A stretch of 64,000 nt of DNA. It comes from Mytilus edulis. Its lineage: Eukaryota. The position numbers and the translations under genes were made by a program. Numbering within the stretch: position 1 is the stretch's first letter; each line of letters opens with the position of its first letter. Under the pieces are notes generated by a model. That model had not been told where the DNA came from and ran no database searches. It saw only the letters and a program-made list of their open reading frames with translations. The stretch lies in NCBI RefSeq assembly GCF_963676685.1, contig NC_092353.1, positions 34,038,001-34,102,000 on the forward strand. Reading direction: 5' to 3'. This document shows, in pieces, positions 4,057 through 54,578 of the stretch.

Positions 4057-7000
4057 TGAAAGCAGTATGTTTATAACACAGAAGCGATTCATACTAAAGA
4101 CATGTGGAAGGACAACTTTGCTACTTGCCATGGAACCATTGATCAGACTGGTAACAGAAAAATGTGGTGACCATAAAGTTGTGGTAGGTTATTGACAAAT
4201 TTATGGTTTTTGTTGATTGACTGAAAAAAGGCAAGGTTTCTTTACTAAAAATGTACCATTTTCTGCCATATGTAATGTATATGTTGTCTGCCACCTCTTT
4301 GACACTGTAATTGTTATGAATCTACTTACATGCACAGTGATTCATAGCAGAGAAATATAATATTTTTGCCTTCAAGATAGATAGATAGATATATGAAAAA
4401 AGCTAAGCCTTTTAGCTTTCTGTTTGACGACATCATGCATAGTAGTACTAATTTCATTTTGACATCGTTACTAAACATTTCTAAATTAAAAAGTCAAAAG
4501 AAGCATGTAAAAGATCTTGTTTAAAGTCAAATCAACTAAGCATGAAAATAAAATATTAAACACATGTATATATTAATTGTGCATATTTATAGGATGTGTT
4601 TTACTCAAGGAAGAAATTTGCAAAGCCAGAGCAACAACACAAGATACACAGAACTTTTGAAGATGAGGTAATTAGACAAGGGTAGACTAATTTTTTAATT
4701 GTTTTCTTCAGAGAAGTTTTGCAAGCTTCTAGCATGAACTTTAACCTGTTATTCAAATGTAAACAAACAAAAAATAGAAAATATATGAAATGGTAATAGT
4801 GAAATGTTCATTTGACACATTCCCCATATCCATCCTCAATTTAACCTTCATGACCGTACTTAAAATATACAAATGAAGAATTACTGAAAATTCATGAGAT
4901 GATAAAACTTCTTTCATCAGAGTAATTCCTATTTATATTGCCATTCAACTTAACATGCATAAGTTTTCTACCTGGCTGATTTATTTTCTAACCCATTTTT
5001 ATGGCAATTTCAGGGGCCAAGTAATGACTGTATTTTCATTTCTTACTCTATTGTTATAGTAATTCATTCATGACAGTATGTTTTTCTTTTAGGTACACCA
5101 CCTTGATCAGCTGTTTAAAAGTAAGTAGTTTCTGGCCAATGATCTTGTACTGTAAATTTAAAAATTATGTCAAGTTTTTATACGCCCGTCAAAATTTTGA
5201 CGGGACGTATTATGGTATACAAATGTCCGGTGTCTGTCCGTCTGTCCGTCTGTTCGGCGTAAACATGTCGCACCGTAACTTGAGAACGACTTATCCAAAT
5301 TTCATGAAACTTAATATAGTTGTTTCTTATGATGGTCACATGATCTGTATACTTTTTGGTGAAAATAAGATTTAAACTTTTTGAGTTACGGCACTTTATA
5401 ACTAAAACAGGGGTGTGTTTTTTTTCACATGTCGCACTGTATCTCAAAAACGATTCTTGATTATGACTTTAAAACTTTAAACACTTCTTAGTTATATTAA
5501 TCTCAATATCTGTATACTTTTTGGTGATGATTCAAAATTTCATTTTTGAGTTATTGAGTATTTTGTAATAAAGGGGGAGGTTTTTTTACATGTCACACCA
5601 TATCTCAAAAACTATTTATGATTATTGCTTAAAACTTTACACATGTCTTTGTTATATTAATCTCAATATCTGTATACTTTTTGGTGATGATTCAAAATTT
5701 CATTTTTGAGTTATTAGTATTTTGTAAAAAAGGGGGAGGTTTTTTTTTTTACATGTTGTGCCGTATCTCAAAAATAAGTTATGATTATTGCTTAAAACTT
5801 TACACACTTCTTTGATATATCTAAAGATCTGTATACTTTTTGGTTTTGATTCAAAATTTTATTTTGGTAATATTTAGTTTTTGTAAAAAAAAACAGGGTG
5901 GGGGGTTTCACATGTCCCGCCGTGTCTCTAAAACAATATATGGTTATTGCTTAAAACTTTCTCATAAACTATTTATGATTATTGCATAAGACTTCCACAT
6001 AAGACGTCGGGCGTATCATGTGCTCATGGCGCAGCTGTTTATTATTAATTAGAATAATTTTACTGGATAAGTATCACAATAATAAGACGTTGCATTCTGA
6101 ATTTGATATATAAATTTTTATAAAGATTTTCATCAAATCGCAAAAATTAATTTCATATTTTTGTGCAATTATAAATTTTCACAATAATTTCTGAATTTAC
6201 AGTATTCTAATGCTAAATTTATGATATCTTATAAATCAATAATTTCTCATTATTGATTTTATCAAATTGCAAAAATTCAACATGACATATCACAGATAGT
6301 AAAACCTTTATGACTTCTTGTCACGTCTGAAACAACATACAACTATATAGTCAATTACAAATGTGTTTCACAAATTTTGTTGTTAAACCTGCATGTGATT
6401 CTCTTATGGTTAACATTCACATTGTGATGCAATGGAGGAAATATACATTGTTTTGACCTTTGAAAGGCATCACTGACCTAACAAACAACCGAATATTTTT
6501 TCATGATGTTGGATAAGGCAATCAAATTAACTAATCACCACCATCAGAGAATAGCTCTATCATATCTTCATTTTGATTGAAGTGGAACAAAATTTTAATA
6601 GAACATGCATATAAATGTTATTTGTAGATGGCGCTGCTTACACACTTGGGAAGATTAATAAAGACTGTTGGTGAGTTGACTATTGTAGAAATTTCCATTG
6701 TTTATCACACACAAATATTTTATTGGGCTTTTTCCCTTTTTCAAAAACCTGTATCTGCTATATTTATACACAAAACACATGAACACTTATATGCAGCAAA
6801 AAGAGAGAGAATTATTTAATGGCCATTTAAAATAATATCCCTGTATAAGTATGCAGACAGATAAACATGTACATTGTTTGTTGATTTCTCCACATTCAGG
6901 GATATGGATTAAGGGGAGAGGGTGTATTTCATCAATTATAGATCTGAAAGCTTCATGTAATTACTTCTTGTGAATATCGATGGAATAATTATCAAACACA

Positions 7001-10000
7001 CACATTTTTTTTAACATTGGCTTAGAAATATTTATCTTTTAATCTAGCTTGAAAAAATAAAGTTCTTTTAATCAAACACTGATGTTTTAATTTGAAAATA
7101 TTCTGGATACATACAATGACATATAATGTACCATGGTTCCAAAATCAATAGTATAACTAAGTTTGTTTCGTAAGTCAAAAAGCATTTCAAGGTATTCATA
7201 TAATTCCATTTCAAAGAAATTTTATTTTATTTTCAGTCTTTTATAACACTGATTTTAATGAATTTTTACTCTTACAATTAATTAAAAATAAAGCAAAAAA
7301 TATAGCATGAAAAGTTTGATTTAATTGTTTATATCAATCATACTGAAACTATTTTATTTTGTCCTCTTGAACAGGTTATCGGACCAAATGAAAATTGGTG
7401 CTTAAGACCATGGCCAAGGATGAACGGACGGTCATGACAAATTTTGATTGGCTTTGAAAGTATGACTACATTCACAAACTCAGTTTTCAAACTGAACTGA
7501 ATTTTGATTGGTCAATTTAAATTATAACTGGGGTTCAGATTGGTCATACATCAGCCAGTTATATTTGTTATGACCCAGGTTGTACCTTTATACAAAGTTA
7601 CCTGCTAATCACTCTTTATGCCTTGCAATTAAGTTATGCTTAGTGTATTAAAATTTAAAAAAAAAGTGTACTTAAATTTTATAGAAAAACGTGAAATAAT
7701 GTTCTTTTAAAAACAGAATATGAAGGAGTTTGGTCAATTGGCAGTGTTTGTTTGTCTGTTTATTATTTGGTCAATTATCAAAGACCGTCCTTTGTGATAA
7801 GCAGTACTACTCAGTATTTATTTAAATTTTGGTATTATACTTAACTAAACATTCAGAAAGTGTATTCTTCTTTGTAGTAGGTATTACTTCACTATAAAAA
7901 CAATGTTGTAGTATAAGATAAGATACCGTAGTTAAATCATTCCTAATCCTGACCTGTTAGATAGCTAAATCATTGCTACCCCTGACTTTTTTTGGCTTTC
8001 CTTGATGAAGTGGAGAAAAAGAGACTTGGACATGCTTTATACATCATCAGCATCAACAATGTATTAGTTTGTCAGTAAACAGGTAGGGACTAGTAGTAGG
8101 TCATTGATATTATGACTGCATTTGTATTTTCAGTCATATCCAATTTCCATGGAGATTATTTGGCCATGCCCCTCAATTATGGTCTATTGTCTTTGAAACT
8201 TGCTTAGTCCATGCAGTTTACATGTTAAAGTTGTAATTAGGTTAGTTTAAGAGAAACTACTAATGGCAAGTCAATGATATTCAGTAAGCAATTGTTTTAG
8301 TGTTTGCAAGTTTTATTACCATGGATTTTATGTGTCTTTTCCACCTTATAATGGTTTATTGCCTTTGAATCTTTTTCATATTCTACAGTACATATCAAAG
8401 TTTGTGTTTAGTTAGCTTAAAGGGAACTACTTATGATAAGTCAATGACATTTGGTATGGAGTTGCATTAGTATTTGACATTTCTCATTTCAGCAAAGGTT
8501 ATATAGTCCTGCAGTCTATAACTAGTTATGATTCATCGACTGAATGTTTTGCATAGTTTATATGTTGACATTTTATATTTTAACATTTGCATTCTTCAAA
8601 AGTACAAGGCATATCATATCTCTGTGTCAACAGTTTATCTGGTTCAGAGATAGAAAGTTCTATATTCTGACACCAGCTCAAACAATGATAAATCATTTTA
8701 CTGTTGGCATGTTGCCAAGGTTACTTATGTTATCTATACCAGTGGTCCTGAGATTTTAAACTTTGTGTATGACCGAAATTAGCCTGTTCAAATATTATCC
8801 ATCATTCTTGTAGAATGTTCTACTGCTACCAAAACCAGACTTATAATTTATATAAAGCATATTTACATGAATTATCTTAGGTAATTCCTCTGCTTGTATT
8901 GATATTAAAAAGGGGAAGAGAAAATTGTATGTATCTGAATGTTTTTACACACTATAATGTAAATATATATTTGTAAAGAAAAATGTGAAGATAACTGTAT
9001 TTGAGTTTTATTATTTATATATATTTATGGATGTGACTATAGAAATATAAAAGCTATCATGTCCTATTGACACATTTCTTATTTAAATTAGCTAATAATT
9101 TTGCACATATGTTTTCATGTTCAGCAGTAAATTTTTAGAAATTCTTGATGTTTAACAAAATTAAGAAAACAACATTACAGTAGATTTCATAGAAAAAGGT
9201 CCATTAAACTGATATATATTTGGCCTAAGAGTCCTTTAGAGTTTAGACTTCAATTTTGGGATCGAAATATGTTTTACACACCTGATATAGAACAGATGAT
9301 GATATTGAGACTAAGAGTCTAACTGTTTATTATTCATGACTTGAGTTCTGCAGTTATTGTGGCTCCGTTATTGTCTTATTTACCGTATTATGGAAACAGC
9401 AACTCATAAATGGAGGAAAGTTGTTGTAATTGATTTTTAAGATAAACTTGTGAAGCACAAAAACAAAATTTAGAAATCATATTTTGACTTTTTTATTGTT
9501 GAAAAATAAACAGATATTATCACAGTAATTTGCTCTAGTTTGAATAAGCATTCAAATTGATCTTTCTTTTAGTCTATGCTAAACAAAATCAAATTATATT
9601 CAGGAATAAAAAGATGTTTCTAACTTTATCTAAATCTAACTATGGTATAATTCTTTCATTATCAGGTTTTTATTTGTGAATGAAATGTTAATTAGTTATC
9701 TTGAATGTTTCAGGCACTTGTATATGTTGGAGGATGTACCTGGTGTTAAAGATCCAGATCAGACCATTGAAATATCCTTAAAAAATGGACATTTCAATAA
9801 ACATATGTTCTATATAACATGTTTTATTTCAAAGATCTAAATATGAACAATCACATATGTGACCCGCCATGACATTTGCAGGCTTATGGAGGTAGAACGT
9901 CATTGTTAGAAAAATTATAAACATGATAAATATCGAGATTCAATGAAATACGTATTGCAAAGAAGAGATGAACACTTTCCTTGGCTTCTTTTTTGCGGAC

Positions 10001-47622: not shown

Positions 47623-50600
47623 AAATGACTGAATAAATAGTCAACGATTAGTCAACGATCAATCTTACGGGGCGATGGATCATAAAAACGATTCAGTACA
47701 CTACAGAATATAATATATAACAAGTCTAAAAGGGTACAACATCACCAAAAACACAATAAAACGAACAATATGTTAGATATTTCGGAAAACAGATATCCTT
47801 CCTCGGCAATTGCACGATGACAAATGAATCATGTCAATTAAAATTAACACTCTATCAAAATCTTGAAATTTATACAATTTAAGCGAACGGTTGAACAATT
47901 TTTAAAATTTCCAAACACGGCACAGACTACAAAGATATGCCAAAATAAAAATAGATATTAACGATGTGAACTGGCACAACTCTAAATTCCCAAAGGTGGT
48001 GACAGTTGAGATGTTAAACAACTGCGTGGAAATACAGTCCCAATAAACAGTCCTGACAGATCTAAGCTGGTATAATATTTAAAATATGACAACGGTAGAG
48101 CAATTGCAACAGAGACTGCGTTTTTAAACATCCCAAAAATATAGTAATTAGATGATTAGAAAAATGAGTAATAAATTTTTACTAAGGTTAAGTAATAGAA
48201 CGTGGCTGCGTATTTACACATCCCTGCCAACTATAATTAAAACTAGTATAATTAAAAAATTCCTGAAAAGTATAAGAGTCCAGTACGGAAGCCGGAGTTA
48301 CTGGACACAAGTGATGGCAGGAAATTAGTGATGGTAGGGAAAATGAGTGACTCTTCTATGTTTTTTTCGTTAATGCCCTCTGGGGAAACTGTCCTGAGCT
48401 TTCTTATCCAAAAACTTTCCCGAACAAGTCTGTCGGCCTTCGACCAGTCCTCGTTGTGATCTATGATGGTGATGGTAAGTTGTTTAAGATCAGCTTGGGC
48501 GTGCCCATGTGATCGTAAATGACGACTTACGGGGAGGTCGGGCTTGCAGGTGTATTCACTACGATGACCATTCATGCGTTTGTTGAATGGCTGTTCTGTC
48601 TCGCCAACATACTGCATGCCACATCGACACTGAAGAATGTATACAACATTCTGGGTTTTGCAAGTTACATTACAAAATATTGTGTACACAGACCCAATGG
48701 AGTGGCAAGTAAATGTTTGAGTATTCAGTATTTGTTGGCAAGTCAGACATCGTTTGTTACCACATGACTTGCACCATTCTGTAATTGAACAGCTTTTATT
48801 AGAGGAGACGGCAGCTTTCACAAATAAGTCTTTTAGACTTGCTGGTCTCCGAAAAGCTAAGACAGGAGGATCGGGAAAGATTTTGGATAATTTTGGGTGA
48901 TTGGCAATACTTTGCCAATTGGCACGGATCAAACGTGAAAGGTAAGTAAAGGCGGGGTTGTATGTTAAAACAAATGGAACTTCTTTGCTGCGCCTCTTCT
49001 TTTTGTACTGTAACAGGTCATTGCGGCTGTTATTGTTAGCACGCGCAAACTCCTTATCTATGTCCAATTTCTTAAAACCTCGTTTGATTAAAAATCCGCG
49101 AAGTTCCTATAACCGCTGAGTGACAGCCTCCTTAGAGGAGCAAATCCGCTTTACTCTGAGAGCTTGACTGTACGGGATACTTTTTTTACAGTGTTTGGGG
49201 TGACAACTTTGGGGAGAAAGGTACTGATGTTTATCTGTAGGTTTACAGTAGAGGTGTGTTGATATGACACCGTCTTTTATAGATGTAGTTGTGTCTAAGA
49301 AAGATATCTTAAGAGTCGGATATTTCATATGTAAATTTAATTGACTGGTGGGCGTTGTTTGCATGTCTGATAAAAGCATCCAATTTTTGTTGGGATTCAA
49401 TCCATTTCATGTCAACGTCATCGATGAAACGGAACCAAGACAGAGGTTTGGATAAAGATGTTGAAATAATTTGTTTCTCTAATTTGCCCATGAAAATATT
49501 GACGTAAGACGGTGCCATTTTCGTCCCCATCGCTGTCCCGTTTATTTGAAGGTAATTCTCACCATTAAAGGTAAAATTGTTGCATTTTAGGACCAGAGTA
49601 GGCAGCTGGACTAAACATTCGGTAGGTGGTTCTAAAGTGTTGCGCGAGTCCCATATTTCCCTACACGATTGTATTCCGTCATCATGAGGTATGTTGGTAA
49701 ATGCAATGAGGTGACATCTAAAGTGACAAGGAGAGTTTCCGGAGGAAGAGGGTTCATGGATTCCATTTTGCGAAGATAATCTGTAGTGTCTTGAATGTGA
49801 GAAGGAAGATTTTCTACATGAGATCTTAAATGAAAGTCTACAAATTCCGAGATTTTCTCAGTCGGGTGGCCGTTGGCGGATACAATGGGTCTACCGAGGT
49901 TGTTAACCTTGTGTATTTTAGGAAGAAGATACAATCGACCAGGCTTGGCGTTCTCTGGTTTTTAATATCCAATTGTATCCTCATCTATGTGACCGTCATT
50001 GTGCATGGTTTGTAACGCAGTAATAATTTGGGAACTAAACTCGGAAGTAGGTTCATAGTAAAGTTTCTTATAAAATCTCTCATCAGAGAGCTGATGTTCT
50101 GCGTCCGCGATGTAGTTGGCTTTGTCCATTATCACAACGGCACTTCCCTTGTCTGCTGGTTTTATAACAATATCATCTCGGTTTCTCAGCGATTGTATGG
50201 CATTTTTTCTCGTCAGAAGAGGTGTTATAAAACGACGAGTACTTATTGCTGGCTAGATGAACAACATCCGATTTCATTTTATCAATAACATCTTACAGTG
50301 TAGCAGATTTGCTGGGCTTTGGAACCCATGAACTCTTCTTTTTAAAATGCGGAATTATGATTTCGTCCTCCGAGTTGGACGTGGCTGTGTCTTCCTCATT
50401 ATCCTCCTCTTTATCCTTGTTACCAAAGTATTCTTTAATTCTGAGGGTTCTGGCAAAGTTATTGAGGTCATCCTCCAGTTTCATATTATCTATGTTACTT
50501 GGATTAGGGCAAAAGTTCAAACCCTTAGATAAGACTTTAGTTTCATCCTCAGTAAAAGAGACTGTTGACAAATTAACAACTGGGTTGTTGGGATTGGCCG

Positions 50601-50636: not shown

Positions 50637-51302
50637 CTTTTCCCGATCCTCCTGTCTTAGCTTTTCGGAGACCAGCAAGTCTAAAAGACTTATTTGTGAA
50701 AGCTGCCGTCTCCTCTAATAAAAGCTGTTCAACTACAGAATGGTGCAAGTCATGTGGTAACAAACGATGTCTGACTTGCCAACAAATACTGAATACTCAA
50801 ACATTTACTTGCCACTCCACTGGGTCTGTGTACACACTATTTTGTAATGTAACTTGCAAAACCCAGAATGTTGTATACATTCTTCAGTGTCGATGTGGCA
50901 TGCAGTATGTTGGCGAGACAGAACAGCCATTCAACAAACGCATGAATGGTCATCGTAGTGACTACACCCGCAAGCCCGACCTCCCCGTAAGTCGTCATTT
51001 AAGATCATATGGGCACGCCCAAGCTGATCTTAAAAAACTTACCATCACCATCATAGATCACAACGAGGACTGGTCGAAGGCCGACAGACTTGTTCGGGAA
51101 AGTTTTTGGATAAGAAAGCTCAGGACAGTTTCGCCAGAGGGCATTAACGAAAAAACATAGAAGAGTCACTCATTTTCCCTACCATCACTAATTTCCTGCC
51201 ATCACTTGTGTCCAGTAACTCCGGCTTCCGTACTGGACTATTACACTTTTCAGGAATTTTTTAATGATACTAGTTTTAATTACAGTTTGCAGGGATGTGT
51301 AA

Positions 51303-54067
51303 TAACCTCATTGGTTGATATCTTTGGCGGAAGTACATGTGATACATCCTCATTCTTTCAATATCCAAGCTGTGGGAAGGTCGTGCTCCACGTGTTGTCG
51401 GCAAAGTAACTATATTCTTTAACTTTTACTTACATTTGCCTTGGTGGCTTTAAGACCTTGGTGGTCATTTATATATGCCTTGGTGGCAAAAGACCTAGGT
51501 GGTCATTTATATATGCCTTGGTGGCAATAGACCTAGGTGGTCATTTTTATATGCCTGGGTGGCAATAGACCTAGGTGGTCATTTTTATGATTTTTTACAT
51601 TTGCCTTGATGGCAACAATGAATTAAAATACTAGCCTTGGGGGCGTCAAGACCTTGGTGGTCATTTATATTTGCCTTGGCGGCTTCTTGATAGAACTAGA
51701 TGGTAATGTTTGACCTTGGTGGCAAAAATGTTTTGGGATTTAGACTTTAATAGGTAGTTATTATCAACCAAGGTGGTCAGATATTTGTTATGCCGTGCGC
51801 CGGTTAAACGCAGGGCAAAGTGCTATCGCTATATAAAATATATGCGGAAGTGGGGGCTCTGGCCATTTTGGAAAATTGTAGTTGAAAGGAGAATAATAAA
51901 TTGTTTGTAGGGTAAATAGTTTCAATTGTTACTTTTGACTGTGTTGTGGACTTTTCATTTATTTTTACATCGTACATACTGATAGAAATGCTATTTAAAG
52001 ACTTTGTTAGAAAAGAATAGAATTATTGAGAAAGTGGAATAATTTAGTGTGACATGTCACTTGATATTCATGTTTTTTATCGGAGTGATGTGTATTGAAT
52101 TATAAGGTGTCTTCGTCGAGGTCCGTGTTCAGCGGTCTGTTTGATTGTACATAGAATTGAATAGAATGTTTTTGTTTTCAGATGGTGTTACCTACAGCTT
52201 TGACAGGGTGACGAATGAAGGAGAAGTAATATGACATTGCACGATGATTCATGTCAATGAATTCGAACAACCTTTTTTAAAAGGAAAGGATTTTTTCTAA
52301 TCAGAATATGGTGAGAACAAATTACAATTGAAGTAATGTTTTGATTTCTGAAAATAGGAAAATAATGAATGGGAAAAATATTGATACTACACTAAATTAT
52401 GTATGTCTGTGTTGAGAAAGGCAGAAGATGCCAATATGGCACGGTACTAAAAAAAAAAAAAAAATCTGTGATGGAAGCAGCTTTATGTTCAAATGAACCT
52501 ATTTAAAAGTAATGCTAATAATTTTTCCGTAATTTCATGATGTTTTCTATTGATTGTGTATTTAATTTCATTGATGTGTTGAAATATGTCACAAAAATCT
52601 TTTTGTCATGGGAGATTAAATAATGGTTGCAATATTTTTGTTTTGTTTTGTTTTATCTAAATTAATAAATAAATATAATGTTGAATGATTTTGTATACTA
52701 GTACAAATGTATACTTAAATTTTATGTATGGTTAAATTTTTTAATTTAAATTTCTTTGTCTACAGTTCGAGGGACACTGATTCCCTAGTGGTTTTCCACG
52801 TGGATTGTAGGCAAAGGGATTTTTCCTTTTCAAAGTGTGACTAATGCTGTCTTTAGTACAAATAAACAATTTGTTATTGGTTAATATATTTTCAGCAGAC
52901 ATTTGAAGAATCGAGTGGAAATACAATTGTCAATGTTCCTGATTATGAAGTAAAGAGTGTGTTTGATTCAACAACAGTAAAGAAAGAGACAAGCCAGCAT
53001 AGTTTACACTTGGAGGTTAAGTCCCTTTGCTTACAAGCTTTCCACATGCTGAAGATGTTATTAGAATAATGACAATGTTCATTTTGATATGAGTTCATTG
53101 CCTTAACTCAACTTTTAAAAGTCTGTATGTGGTCAAATTCATGAGAATTTATTGAATTATGAACGATTTATAAAGAACTGTGTACATGCATCTTTAAATG
53201 TTTAGAAGTGTTTTAACGTAATTTTAAAAGGAATTATATTTAATAAAAGTGTTGAATTTGTTTTGAGTATTGGGAATACTATTCCTTAAGGGAAAGCCTT
53301 GCTAGTGGTGTATTTTGAGATTGGCCTGCAAATATGCTGTATGGACTATAGAGTTTTCTATGCCCATAACTTAACATGAACTGGATGCAAGATTATATCA
53401 ATCACTGAGGATATGTGTATAACCTCATTGGTTGATATCTTTGGCGGAAGTACATGTGATACATCCTCATTCTTTCAATATCCAAGTGGTGGTTGGTTTA
53501 AGGGCTATGTTTGGTCAGGCAATACATATTGCCTGTTTGGGTTGATGAGGTTCTTGATAAGTTCCCCCCTCTCCCACCCATAAGTACCAAAATGTGGATA
53601 TGTTTTTATATTTATATTTCAATATTGGTATTACATGTATGCATTTTGGGTTGATGAGCACGAGACAACATTACAAAAACATGAGCATTACCATGGGATC
53701 ATGTTGACAAAACAAACCTTCGCTTTATCGATTTTCAAGGGAAAGGTCAATTAGGGCAAGTGTATTGGCATGTTTGTATTTGCTTTTTCATTACAATGGT
53801 AAAAATAAGATTATATATCTCTGATGACAAAAATTTTGATTATAATGCTTCATTTTATGAGCTCCAGAGTAGTTTTATAACTGAAAAACAACTGTGCACT
53901 ATATCTAGTGAGCTCTTCTGCATTGCATTGTGCATGGTAGTCCACATTTTGGTTTCTGAAACGTTAAGATATTATCTTGTATTCGGTTCTTTCCTCTAGA
54001 GTTTTCTATGCCCATAACTTAACATGAACTGGATGCAAGATTATATCAATCACTGAGGATATGTGTA
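51303..54067 (+). mobile_element. Non-autonomous split-direct-repeat element, putative tyrosine-recombinase (PAT/Ngaro/TOC1-like) type
   Basis: A1 51303-51369 = A2 53420-53486 and B1 53349-53419 = B2 53997-54067, in the order A1..B1A2..B2. No long ORF. The empty site is visible at 48200-48230 (minus strand). Confidence 0.8.
51436..51725. repeat. ~38-bp tandem repeat of alternating GCCTTGGTGGC / GACCT(A/T)GGTGGTC motifs
   Basis: Four clear units TGCCTTGGTGGCAATAGACCTAGGTGGTCATTTATATA (51437-51588), followed by degenerate units. Confidence 0.9.
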
Positions 54068-54578
54068 ATACGCAGCCACGTTCTATTACTTAACCTTAGT
54101 AAAAATTCATTACTCATTTTTCTAATCATCTAATTACTATATTTTTGGGATGTTTAAAAACGCAGTCTCTGTTGCAATTGCTCTACCGTTGTCATATTTT
54201 AAATATTATACCAGCTTATTTCTGTCAGGACTGTTTATTGGGACTGTATTTCCACGCAGTTGTTTAACATCTCAACTGTCACCACCTTTGGGAATTTAGA
54301 GTTATGCCAGTTCACATCGTTAATATCTATTTTTATTTTGGCATATCTTTGTAGTCTTTGCGCCGTGTTTGGAAATTTTAAAAATTGTTCCAGCGTTCGT
54401 TCAAATTGTGTAAATTTCAAGATTTTGATAGAGTCTTAATTTGAATTGACATGATTCATTTGTCATCGTGCAATTACCGAGGAAGGATATCTGTTATCCG
54501 AAATATCTAACATATTGTTCGTTTTATTGTGCTTTTGGTGATGTTTTACCCTTTTAGACTTGTTATATTATATATATA

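What the first reader, a model, noticed from the sequence alone, without database searches (positions are those of the whole stretch)
51303..54067. Non-coding split-direct-repeat element integrated by a base-conserving crossover: candidate new non-autonomous tyrosine-recombinase element
Seen: a 2,765-bp insert splits one arm of a PLE inverted repeat, so the other arm gives the empty site GCAGGGATGTGTAA^ATACGCAGCC. The insert's left end (A, ~67 bp) and right end (B, ~71 bp) recur exactly, abutting as B-A, at 53349-53486: CACTGAGGATATGTGTA^TAACCTCATTG. This is what a circle junction would read. Crossing that junction with the empty site reproduces both flanks exactly (AGGGATGTGTAA-TAACCTC and GAGGATATGTGTA-ATACGC) with no base gained or lost. 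The apparent 10-bp TSD is therefore junction/target homology at ATGTGTA. Known: A1..B1A2..B2 split repeats and TSD-less integration of circles characterise PAT/Ngaro/TOC1 tyrosine-recombinase retroelements. Inference: an ORF-less element with unusually short repeats, mobilised in trans and recently, since the repeats are identical. Alternative: two cassettes (2.1 kb and 0.65 kb) with shared ends stacked at one att-like site, as in a Crypton or integron-like array.
Basis: partly seen in the sequence, partly recalled or inferred. Interest (0 to 1): 0.88.

Follow-up and report, generated by a model that had tools for sequence, protein, structure and literature searches.

The report
Non-autonomous tyrosine-recombinase retroelement in a mussel
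The 2.77-kb insert is one of about 100 young, gene-less copies of a split-direct-repeat retroelement, and the same genome holds a rare 7-kb relative whose reverse transcriptase and Cre-like recombinase probably copy and insert it.

Summary
Window 51303-54067 reads A1 .. B1A2 .. B2, with A 67 nt and B 71 nt, both pairs 100% identical. It sits in one arm of a Penelope-like inverted repeat, and the other arm gives a clean empty site with no duplication and no loss.

It is a real mobile family, not an artefact or two stacked cassettes. The genome holds 206 A ends, 203 B ends and 101 B-A junctions, so about 100 copies carry the full arrangement. Of 20 fetched copies, 17 were complete, and none of 23 filled sites has a duplication longer than 2 nt. 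All ORFs are 79 aa or shorter.

A 7.0-kb relative (L059 238-7266) has the same architecture. Its ends are 81-86% identical at aligned positions. It has open gag-like, RT/RNase H and ALOG-plus-tyrosine-recombinase ORFs, and the recombinase model has a Cre fold. At least three copies have an intact recombinase ORF, and no closer partner exists in the assembly.

New details:
- The B-A junction is a lox-like site: 18-nt inverted arms around a 6-nt spacer.
- The crossover always falls at the A-proximal spacer edge.
- Right flanks mimic the A arm (NAWCM, p=2.5e-10).

Other first readers noted similar elements elsewhere in this genome. Verdict: a new member of a known kind, the non-autonomous DIRS-order elements such as TOC1.

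The parts
51303..54067 (+). Whole non-autonomous split-direct-repeat element (2,765 bp), ORF-less
   Evidence: Its boundaries are fixed by the empty site in the other PLE arm.
51303..51369 (+). A1, left terminal repeat (67 nt), identical to A2
   Evidence: Nucleotide diversity among 18 copies is 0.0046, against 0.03-0.04 inside the element.
51430..51588 (+). Tandem array of CCTTGGTGG-containing units (38 nt x 4.2), with looser copies further downstream. The autonomous relative has the same motif array at the same place.
   Evidence: (L059 428-554).
52749..52849 (+). Relic homologous to the gag-pol spacer of the autonomous element (L059 2971-3069, 83%)
   Evidence: colinear BLASTN hits.
52977..53071 (+). 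Relic homologous to the start of the pol ORF of the autonomous element (L059 3192-3291, 71%)
53349..53419 (+). B1, internal copy of the right terminal repeat (71 nt)
53396..53437 (+). Lox-like core at the B1|A2 junction. The 18-nt arms are 53396-53413 and 53420-53437 (15/18 complementary), around the 6-nt spacer TGTGTA (53414-53419). The B|A boundary is the right edge of the spacer.
   Evidence: 0 of 2000 shuffles reach 15/18. The same dyad is seen in the autonomous element at 13-14/18.
53420..53486 (+). A2, internal copy of the left terminal repeat
53997..54067 (+). B2, right terminal repeat, identical to B1
   Evidence: Diversity is 0.0046.
48208..48227 (-). Paralogous empty site in the other arm of the PLE inverted repeat. 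The insertion point is equivalent to between 48214 and 48213.
50639..51302 (+). Left part of the host Penelope-like element arm that was split. It includes the end of a GIY-YIG ORF (50900-51157).
   Evidence: and (PF01541, E=1.5e-5).
54068..54575 (+). Right part of the split PLE arm

Best explanation

It has kept only the cis parts: the A and B terminal repeats, the internal B1A2 junction, a CCTTGGTGG repeat array after A1, and a few colinear relics. It has lost all genes.

Inferred mechanism, step by step:
1. It is transcribed.
2. It is reverse-transcribed in trans by the RT/RNase H of the related 7-kb autonomous family found at L059. The internal B1A2 junction serves as the template that rebuilds complete ends or a joined B-A junction, as the ICR does for DIRS-1.
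3. The Cre-like ALOG tyrosine recombinase of that family then recombines the lox-like B-A junction with a weakly matching genomic half-site (N-A-W-C-M).
4. The exchange is conservative, happens at one fixed position, and makes no target-site duplication.

Shown here: the anatomy, copy number, absence of TSDs, constrained ends, target bias, the homologous autonomous element and the fold of its recombinase. Inferred: the RNA step, trans-mobilisation by this particular partner, and the recombination chemistry.
For: Architecture:
- A1..B1A2..B2 is present in 17 of 20 fetched copies.
- Genome-wide there are 206 A ends, 203 B ends and 101 junctions. This is what one junction per element predicts.

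Insertion sites:
- There is no TSD. The longest flank identity in 23 reconstructed sites is 2 nt.
- The empty site in the window is exact.

Constraint on the ends:
- Diversity in A1 and B2 is 0.0046, against 0.03-0.04 internally.

The autonomous relative, L059 238-7266:
- It has the same architecture.
- Its ORFs are on the same strand as A to B. Pol carries RVT_1 (2.6e-14). The 404-aa ORF carries ALOG (3e-19) and a weak Phage_integrase match.
- R208, K237, H324, R327, H349/W352 and Y361 are invariant across 20 homologues.
- The recombinase model has pLDDT 79 and its best PDB matches are Cre, at E=6e-9 with TM 0.58/0.72.
- Its ends, junction, 5' repeat array and several internal patches are colinear with the non-autonomous element.

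Partner assignment:
- The only genomic relatives of its junction are its own few copies and the roughly 100 non-autonomous copies at 81-82%.
- The recombinase ORF is intact in 3 copies at 99-100% identity.

Concerted evolution:
- A1=A2 and B1=B2 at 99-100% within each family.
- The two families differ at 14-19% of aligned positions in A and B.
- That pattern is expected if the ends are regenerated from the internal junction at each cycle.

Literature:
- The SDR definition and lack of TSDs: PMC8969392.
- The SDR reverse-transcription model implies identical repeats at insertion: PMC6681497.
- The DIRS-1 ICR is essential and its RT acts in trans: PMC7192593.
- ALOG-recombinase DIRS1-type elements occur in molluscs: PMC3537659.
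Against:
- The ends of the two families differ at 14-19% of aligned positions, plus indels. Cross-recognition is therefore plausible but unproven, and the true helper could be an extinct or unassembled closer relative.
- No polyadenylation signal or promoter was identified in A or B.
- One solo A2..B2 unit exists (L056). Some copies are 5'-truncated (L049, L028). The model explains these only by secondary events.
- The sample used for flanks and diversity was chosen through perfect B1A2 matches, so constraint on B1A2 itself rests only on the genome-wide counts (74 of 101 junction 25-mers exact).
Confidence: 0.85

Rival explanations
1. The element moves as DNA only, in a Crypton-like way. The recombinase excises it as a circle by recombining its two ends and re-inserts it, with no reverse transcription. 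The internal B1A2 junction is then merely an inherited passenger.
For: A lox-like site and a Cre-fold recombinase are all that a DNA circle would need. No RNA evidence is available.
Against: - An excised circle would carry two equivalent B-A sites and should resolve into 2.1-kb and 0.65-kb circles. Solo units would then be common, but junction count equals element count and only one solo was seen.
- A1/A2 and B1/B2 have evolved in concert across two families that differ at 14-19% of aligned positions. Templated regeneration explains this; cut-and-paste does not.
- The homologous autonomous element encodes an RT with an intact YIDD motif.
Confidence: 0.07
2. It is a true non-autonomous SDR retroelement, but the L059 family does not mobilise it. 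The helper is a closer autonomous relative that is extinct, unassembled or polymorphic.
For: The ends are only 81-86% identical at aligned positions, with indels in A. A spacer variant, ATGGGTA followed by a TAACC-type A end, occurs at five or more loci that could not be fetched.
Against: The junction search finds nothing between the L059 family and the non-autonomous copies. The next recombinase lineage is only 61% identical in protein. The inner arms and the spacer differ at just 2 of 25 positions.
Confidence: 0.25
3. It is a Helitron/Helentron-type rolling-circle element in which read-through of the terminator produced a head-to-tail 1.x-mer that then spread.
For: It has no TSD, head-to-tail abutting ends, subterminal inverted repeats and an internal tandem array, all of which recall bivalve Helentron derivatives (PMC7492417).
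Against: - Flanks show neither an A^T nor a T^T target.
- The ends are TAACC... and ...GTGTA, not TC... and ...CTRR.
- The only homologous coding element encodes RT plus a tyrosine recombinase, not Rep/helicase.
Confidence: 0.02
4. It is two independent cassettes (2.1 kb and 0.65 kb) stacked at one att-like site, or an assembly artefact.
For: The two units share the same ends.
Against: About 100 dispersed copies on all large contigs carry the same two units in the same order. The units almost never occur alone.
Confidence: 0.01

Closest known systems
TOC1 of Chlamydomonas reinhardtii (non-autonomous DIRS-order/PAT-group element)
   Same: It is a gene-less element with split direct repeats, active through the proteins of related autonomous elements. 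The literature calls it an 'active nonautonomous DIRS retrotransposon' (10.1101/2022.06.16.496473). PAT-group membership of the TOC elements is given in PMC3266345.
   Different: The host is an animal (a mussel) and the sequence is unrelated. The repeats are much shorter (67 and 71 nt). Here the candidate helper is identified through colinear homology and carries an ALOG-type recombinase.
ALOG-recombinase DIRS1-type retroposons of marine invertebrates and Ectocarpus (Iyer and Aravind 2012, PMC3537659)
   Same: The autonomous relative (L059) has the same gene set and order: a gag with a zinc knuckle, RT/RNase H with a C-terminal extension, then ALOG plus a tyrosine-recombinase catalytic domain. 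The class was reported from the molluscs Lottia and Crassostrea.
   Different: That paper found all metazoan copies disrupted. Here the recombinase ORF is open in three near-identical copies, and gag and pol are also open in the one copy read (L059). The window's element is a gene-less derivative, which that paper did not describe.
PAT-like / Ngaro-like split-direct-repeat retrotransposons
   Same: They share the A1-internal-B1-A2-B2 layout, the absence of TSDs and near-identical repeat pairs (PMC8969392, PMC6681497).
   Different: The subgroup is not resolved. A methyltransferase-like extension is suspected, because nearest Atlas clusters carry PF05869, but Pfam did not detect it. The ORFs do not overlap, as in Ngaro.
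SIRE, the short derivative of VIPER in Trypanosoma cruzi
   Same: It is a non-autonomous derivative of a tyrosine-recombinase retroelement.
   Different: SIRE corresponds to the A2-B2 region only (PMC6681497). The mussel family keeps the complete A1..B1A2..B2 frame, and its solo A2..B2 form is rare.
Cre/loxP
   Same: The recombinase model superposes on Cre over both domains. The junction has inverted arms around a 6-nt (or, read more loosely, 8-nt) asymmetric spacer, and the crossover falls at a spacer edge.
   Different: The arms are imperfect. The genomic partner is only a degenerate half-site. Only one of the two expected crossover positions is ever seen in the products.

Membership tests
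DIRS-order split-direct-repeat retrotransposons (PAT-like/Ngaro-like) | Termini arranged A1-internal-B1-A2-B2, with A1=A2 and B1=B2 | tested here: met
   Genome counts are 206 A ends, 203 B ends and 101 junctions.
DIRS-order split-direct-repeat retrotransposons (PAT-like/Ngaro-like) | No target-site duplication | tested here: met
   The empty site is exact. In 23 filled sites the longest flank identity is 2 nt.
DIRS-order split-direct-repeat retrotransposons (PAT-like/Ngaro-like) | Encodes gag, RT/RNase H and a tyrosine recombinase | tested here: not met
   The window's element has no ORF above 79 aa, so it is non-autonomous. The homologous 7-kb element L059 238-7266 meets the feature.
DIRS-order split-direct-repeat retrotransposons (PAT-like/Ngaro-like) | Sequence homology of the ends and junction to an autonomous member | tested here: met
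   A is 54/67 and B is 59/69 identical at aligned positions. The 25-nt junction differs at 2 positions, and the internal patches are colinear.
DIRS-order split-direct-repeat retrotransposons (PAT-like/Ngaro-like) | Replication through RNA and cDNA | not testable with these tools
The only support is indirect: concerted evolution of the repeat pairs.
PAT-like as against Ngaro-like | Methyltransferase-like domain after RNase H (PAT/DIRS1) or its absence (Ngaro), per PMC3266345 | tested here: inconclusive
   Pfam gives no Dam hit on pol residues 401-708. The nearest Atlas clusters carry PF05869 Dam. A YPPF motif is visible in the pol tail, which I read from memory as methylase motif IV.
Helitron/Helentron | Insertion between A^T or T^T, 5' TC and 3' CTRR ends, Rep/helicase partner | tested here: not met
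   Flanks. The partner encodes RT plus a tyrosine recombinase.
DDE transposon / MITE | Terminal inverted repeats flanked by a TSD of fixed length | tested here: not met
   There is no TSD. The inverted repeats are subterminal and asymmetric.
Crypton (DNA transposon with tyrosine recombinase) | Tyrosine recombinase without reverse transcriptase | tested here: not met
   The homologous autonomous element carries RVT_1 at 2.6e-14 with a YIDD motif.
LTR retrotransposon derivatives (TRIM/LARD) | Two complete LTRs and a 4-6 bp TSD | tested here: not met
   The repeats are split, not complete at both ends, and there is no TSD.

The most novel reading that the evidence does not exclude
Integration may use only one of the two canonical strand exchanges. 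In all 32 right ends and 26 left ends examined, the crossover lies at the A-proximal edge of the 6-nt spacer. A Cre-like enzyme would cut the bottom strand there, and the bottom strand is the antisense, first-strand-cDNA strand. The target resembles the junction only on that side, as a half-site (N-A-W-C-M-T against T-A-A-C-C-T). A two-strand exchange across a non-homologous spacer should leave the spacer at the left end in half of the progeny, and this is never seen. The pattern would fit a single exchange between a single-stranded minus cDNA and duplex target, resolved by replication. That is the way integron attC x attI and CTX-phage integration work, and it agrees with the single-stranded DIRS-1 cDNA reported in PMC7192593.
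Probability: 0.25. Interest if true: 0.75.

Novelty: new member of a known kind. Interest (0 to 1): 0.5.

Why it matters
How DIRS-order elements integrate is still argued mainly from sequence models. Direct experiments exist for Dictyostelium DIRS-1 only.

This mussel family offers about 100 very young insertions with base-exact boundaries, a defined lox-like junction, and a measurable target half-site. It also has an intact candidate helper whose recombinase is predicted to fold like Cre.

Three questions thereby become directly testable:
- Is the internal B1A2 junction the template that rebuilds the ends?
- Does the recombinase act on one strand or two?
- How far can the ends of a parasite diverge from those of its helper?

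For genome annotation, it explains a gene-less 2.6-3.0-kb repeat that lacks TSDs and that standard classifiers would probably leave unclassified.

Tried and rejected
- **Helentron idea.** I started from it because the window's empty site is A^A (T^T on the other strand), the ends hold subterminal inverted repeats, and there is an internal tandem array. I dropped it when 19 further copies showed no constant flanking base and the homologous coding element proved to be RT plus recombinase.
- **Long copies as possible autonomous forms.** Five copies had A-to-A spacing of 3.7-10 kb. All turned out to be ordinary copies with nested insertions of Penelope-like or other elements.
- **TA target-site duplication.** The ends read TA...TA, but the empty site contradicts a TA duplication.
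- **Three-base shared core, as in the DIRS1 model.** B and A abut without overlap, so no shared core sits at the boundary.
- **Left-flank homology to ATGTGTA.** Mean matches are 2.04, against about 2.0 at control offsets.
- **Rfam.** There was no match in 51000-54400.
- **More genome letters.** The ATGGGTA-spacer loci, the C11 and C12 autonomous copies and the 61%-identity recombinase lineage were therefore not read.
- **Pfam Dam domain on the pol tail.** No hit.
Full report
**1. The observation**

- A 67-nt block A occurs at 51303-51369 and again at 53420-53486.
- A 71-nt block B occurs at 53349-53419 and again at 53997-54067.
- B1 abuts A2 directly at 53419|53420.
- Both pairs are 100% identical.
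- The end motifs occur nowhere else in the window.

The left flank motif recurs once, on the minus strand at 48214-48227. There the sequence runs straight on into what is the right flank at 54068 onward.

With the insert removed, 50639-51302 plus 54068-54575 forms a single ungapped 1,173-bp inverted repeat, 97.0% identical, with 47708-48878.

The insertion is therefore exact to one ambiguous A. No base was duplicated and none was lost. The insert has no ORF above 79 aa and no Rfam match.

**2. It is a family**

The 147-nt B1A2 stretch finds at least 40 near-perfect matches on all 14 large contigs of the 1.37-Gb assembly. In the 3-kb loci returned, the whole element aligns at 88-99.6%.

Twenty copies were fetched with 4-kb flanks.
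- Seventeen show the complete A..BA..B layout, 2,639-2,975 bp long.
- One of the other three (L043) is complete but interrupted by a nested insertion.
- One lacks B2, and one is 5'-truncated.

Genome-wide 25-nt pattern counts (2 or fewer mismatches) are:

| Pattern | Count |
|---|---|
| A end | 206 |
| B end | 203 |
| B-A junction | 101 |

These are the numbers expected from about 100 elements that each have two A, two B and one junction.

A single solo A2..B2 unit was found (L056). Recombination between A1 and A2 of a full copy would produce such a unit. This disposes of the 'two stacked cassettes' alternative and of an assembly artefact.

Copies with A-to-A spacing of 3.7-10 kb are ordinary copies carrying nested Penelope-like or other insertions.

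**3. Insertion sites**

In 23 sites where both flanks are known, the longest identity between the end of the left flank and the start of the right flank is 2 nt. So there is no TSD.

The left flank does not resemble the element's ATGTGTA end. Mean matches are 2.04 of 7, the same as at control offsets. The resemblance in the window's copy is particular to that site.

The right flank is biased:

| Position | Base(s) | Count | p |
|---|---|---|---|
| +2 | A | 20/32 | 0.0015 |
| +3 | A or T | 29/32 | 0.0024 |
| +4 | C | 18/32 (16% expected) | 1.5e-7 |
| +5 | A or C | 26/32 | 0.0004 |
| +6 | T | 16/32 | 0.03 |

The full motif N-A-W-C-M is present in 10 of 32 flanks against 1.9% expected (p=2.5e-10). 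It occurs 0-2 times at each control offset.

The motif echoes the first bases of A (T-A-A-C-C-T). The one autonomous copy read also has a right flank that fits it (CAACA).

**4. Constraint and age**

Among 18 aligned full copies, pairwise divergence runs from 0.14% to 7.3%, with a median of 2.1%.

Diversity is 0.0046 in A1 and in B2, against 0.026-0.041 in the interior. A1 and B2 were not used to choose the sample, so this is real constraint on the termini. Such constraint is expected of cis-acting sites in a family whose lineages went on transposing while their interiors drifted.

B1 and A2 were the selection criterion, so their zero diversity in the sample means nothing. The unbiased figure is that 74 of 101 junction 25-mers genome-wide are exact.

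**5. The autonomous relative**

Among the junction variants, three read ...ATGGGTATAGCC.... One was fetched as L059 and holds a 7.0-kb element.
- Layout: A1 238-318, B1 6849-6921, A2 6921-7001, B2 7194-7266.
- ORFs on the A-to-B strand: a 224-aa gag-like ORF with a CX2CX4HX4C knuckle, a 708-aa pol and a 404-aa ORF.
- Pol hits RVT_1 (2.6e-14), reads YIDD, and weakly hits RT_RNaseH.
- The 404-aa ORF hits ALOG (3.1e-19) and, below threshold, Phage_integrase (0.0018).

The recombinase assignment was checked in four ways.
- An alignment with 19 homologues of 39-66% identity keeps R208, K237, H324, R327, H349, W352 and Y361 invariant. This is the tyrosine-recombinase catalytic set.
- The profile finds the ALOG structure 8p5q at 3.6e-18.
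- The profile also finds Cre, weakly, exactly over the H-x-x-R...W...Y region.
- An AlphaFold2 model (pLDDT 79.4) finds Cre-lox complexes first: E=6e-9, probability 1.00, TM 0.58/0.72 over both domains. XerH, Tn1549 integrase, lambda integrase and Flp follow.

The two families are related as follows.
- A is identical at 54 of 67 aligned positions and B at 59 of 69.
- The inner arms and spacer differ at 2 of 25 positions.
- Both carry a tandem array built on CCTTGGTGG 100-300 nt after A1.
- BLASTN patches are colinear: A, the array, the gag-pol spacer, the pol start, the pre-B1 stretch, B1A2, and pre-B2 plus B2.

So the window's element is an internally deleted, diverged derivative of this lineage.

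In the genome the recombinase ORF is intact at 99-100% identity in three places, with one fragment. The next lineage is 61% identical.

A DNA search with the autonomous junction finds only those few copies and then, at 81-82%, the roughly 100 non-autonomous copies. The assembly holds no closer candidate helper.

**6. The junction as a recombination site**

Across B1|A2 lie two 18-nt inverted arms, 15/18 complementary, which 0 of 2000 shuffles reach. They can be read around a 4-, 6- or 8-nt centre.

With the 6-nt spacer TGTGTA, the B|A boundary is exactly the right spacer edge. The autonomous element keeps the dyad (13-14/18) with spacer TGGGTA.

From established knowledge of Cre, lambda Int and XerCD, the two strands are cut at opposite edges of a 6-8-nt spacer, each at the 5' side. 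The right edge is therefore where the bottom strand is cut.

Every end examined has the whole spacer at the B end and none at the A end. This holds for 32 right ends and 26 left ends.

A two-strand exchange across a spacer that does not match the target would leave a heteroduplex. After replication, half of the insertions would then carry the spacer on the left. That class is absent.

The target resembles the junction only on the right, where the monomer that cuts the bottom strand would sit. This is the basis of the 'novel case', and it is inference.

**7. Why retro rather than DNA-only**

Three indirect arguments favour the retro route.
- The helper lineage encodes an RT.
- Solo units are nearly absent. 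A DNA circle with two equivalent junctions should fall apart into the two units.
- A1/A2 and B1/B2 are 99-100% identical within each family, while the families differ at 14-19% of aligned positions. This is concerted evolution, which the SDR model predicts. In that model the ends are rebuilt from the internal junction in every cycle (PMC6681497).

For DIRS-1, experiments show that the analogous internal region is essential, that the RT acts in trans, and that the cDNA is mostly linear and single-stranded (PMC7192593).

**8. Comparison with what is known**

- PMC8969392 defines SDR DIRS elements by 'A1-internal-B1-A2-B2' and the lack of TSDs. Both features are met here.
- PMC3266345 separates Ngaro (no methyltransferase domain, no ORF overlap) from the PAT group (SDRs, sister to DIRS1, includes the TOC elements).
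- PMC3537659 describes a DIRS1-type class whose recombinase carries an ALOG domain. It occurs in molluscs, cnidarians, echinoderms and Ectocarpus, and has gag/Zn-knuckle, RT/RNase H and an inactive adenine methylase. All metazoan copies seen then were broken.

L059 fits that class. Whether its pol tail is the methylase could not be settled.

Known non-autonomous relatives are TOC1, 'the active nonautonomous DIRS retrotransposon' (10.1101/2022.06.16.496473), and SIRE, which is the A2-B2 part of VIPER (PMC6681497). A phrase search for non-autonomous DIRS or Ngaro found only the TOC1 statement. A survey of bivalve transposons mentions DIRS and Ngaro only as low-copy (PMC10294476).

So the kind is known. 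This family, its host, its helper and the integration details are new.

**9. Host**

The nearest recombinase homologues are from Mytilus trossulus (98%) and M. edulis (93%). One M. edulis protein sits on a contig of 93,901,275 bases, which is the length of contig C6 here. By inference the genome is a Mytilus, probably M. edulis.

**10. Limits**

- No reads could be used.
The copies were only compared.
- Other first readers' notes on this genome describe similar ORF-less SDR inserts and lox-like junctions elsewhere. I treat these as leads, not as support.

Noticed in passing
window 47708-48878 and 50639-54575: This is a 1.17-kb inverted duplication (97%) of the 3' part of a Penelope-like element, including a GIY-YIG ORF end. 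The two arms are about 1.8 kb apart once the insert is discounted.
   Followed up: partly
L059 1281-1762: Inside the 5' region of the autonomous element, a 135-aa ORF with no Pfam match is followed directly by a pure 47-nt poly(A) run. It looks like a retro-inserted passenger or a captured transcript. The non-autonomous element has its own 17-nt A run at window 52447-52463.
   Followed up: no
L051 3922-6306 (minus strand); L043 5202-6569 (minus strand): Penelope-like RT ORFs of 794 aa and 455 aa are nested inside copies of the element, in the same orientation as the host copy.
   Followed up: partly
L055 1227-9615: An 8.4-kb nested block lies inside a copy. It has several large ORFs (239, 162, 640 and 491 aa) of an unidentified, probably DNA-transposon type, plus PLE fragments.
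   Followed up: no
G000 C10:32807547, C10:80369693, C13:14205029, C14:32548191, C8:32907043, C6:52779518, C5:91277168: A second ALOG-type recombinase lineage, 61% identical to L059's, has seven intact 411-aa ORFs. Further lineages at 45% and 34% also have intact ORFs. Several tyrosine-recombinase retroelement families therefore look recently active in this genome.
   Followed up: no
G000 C2:49713788, C7:51009705, C7:51128786, C8:48567351, C4:99645975: These junction variants combine the autonomous-type spacer (ATGGGTA) with the non-autonomous-type A end (TAACC). They may be an intermediate subfamily.
   Followed up: no
G000 C5:33379542-33386424: Two copies lie 6.2 kb apart on the same strand and share the same private junction variant (GTAGAACC). 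This looks like a local segmental duplication rather than two insertions.
   Followed up: no
L049 about 5511 (minus strand) and L028 about 627: Two copies stop abruptly at element positions 613 and 688, with unrelated sequence beyond. They may be 5' truncations or large nested insertions beyond the fetched range.
   Followed up: partly
left flanks of 26 copies, position -10: A purine sits at position -10 in 23 of 26 left flanks (p about 1e-4 before correction for the positions examined). This is unexplained.
   Followed up: no
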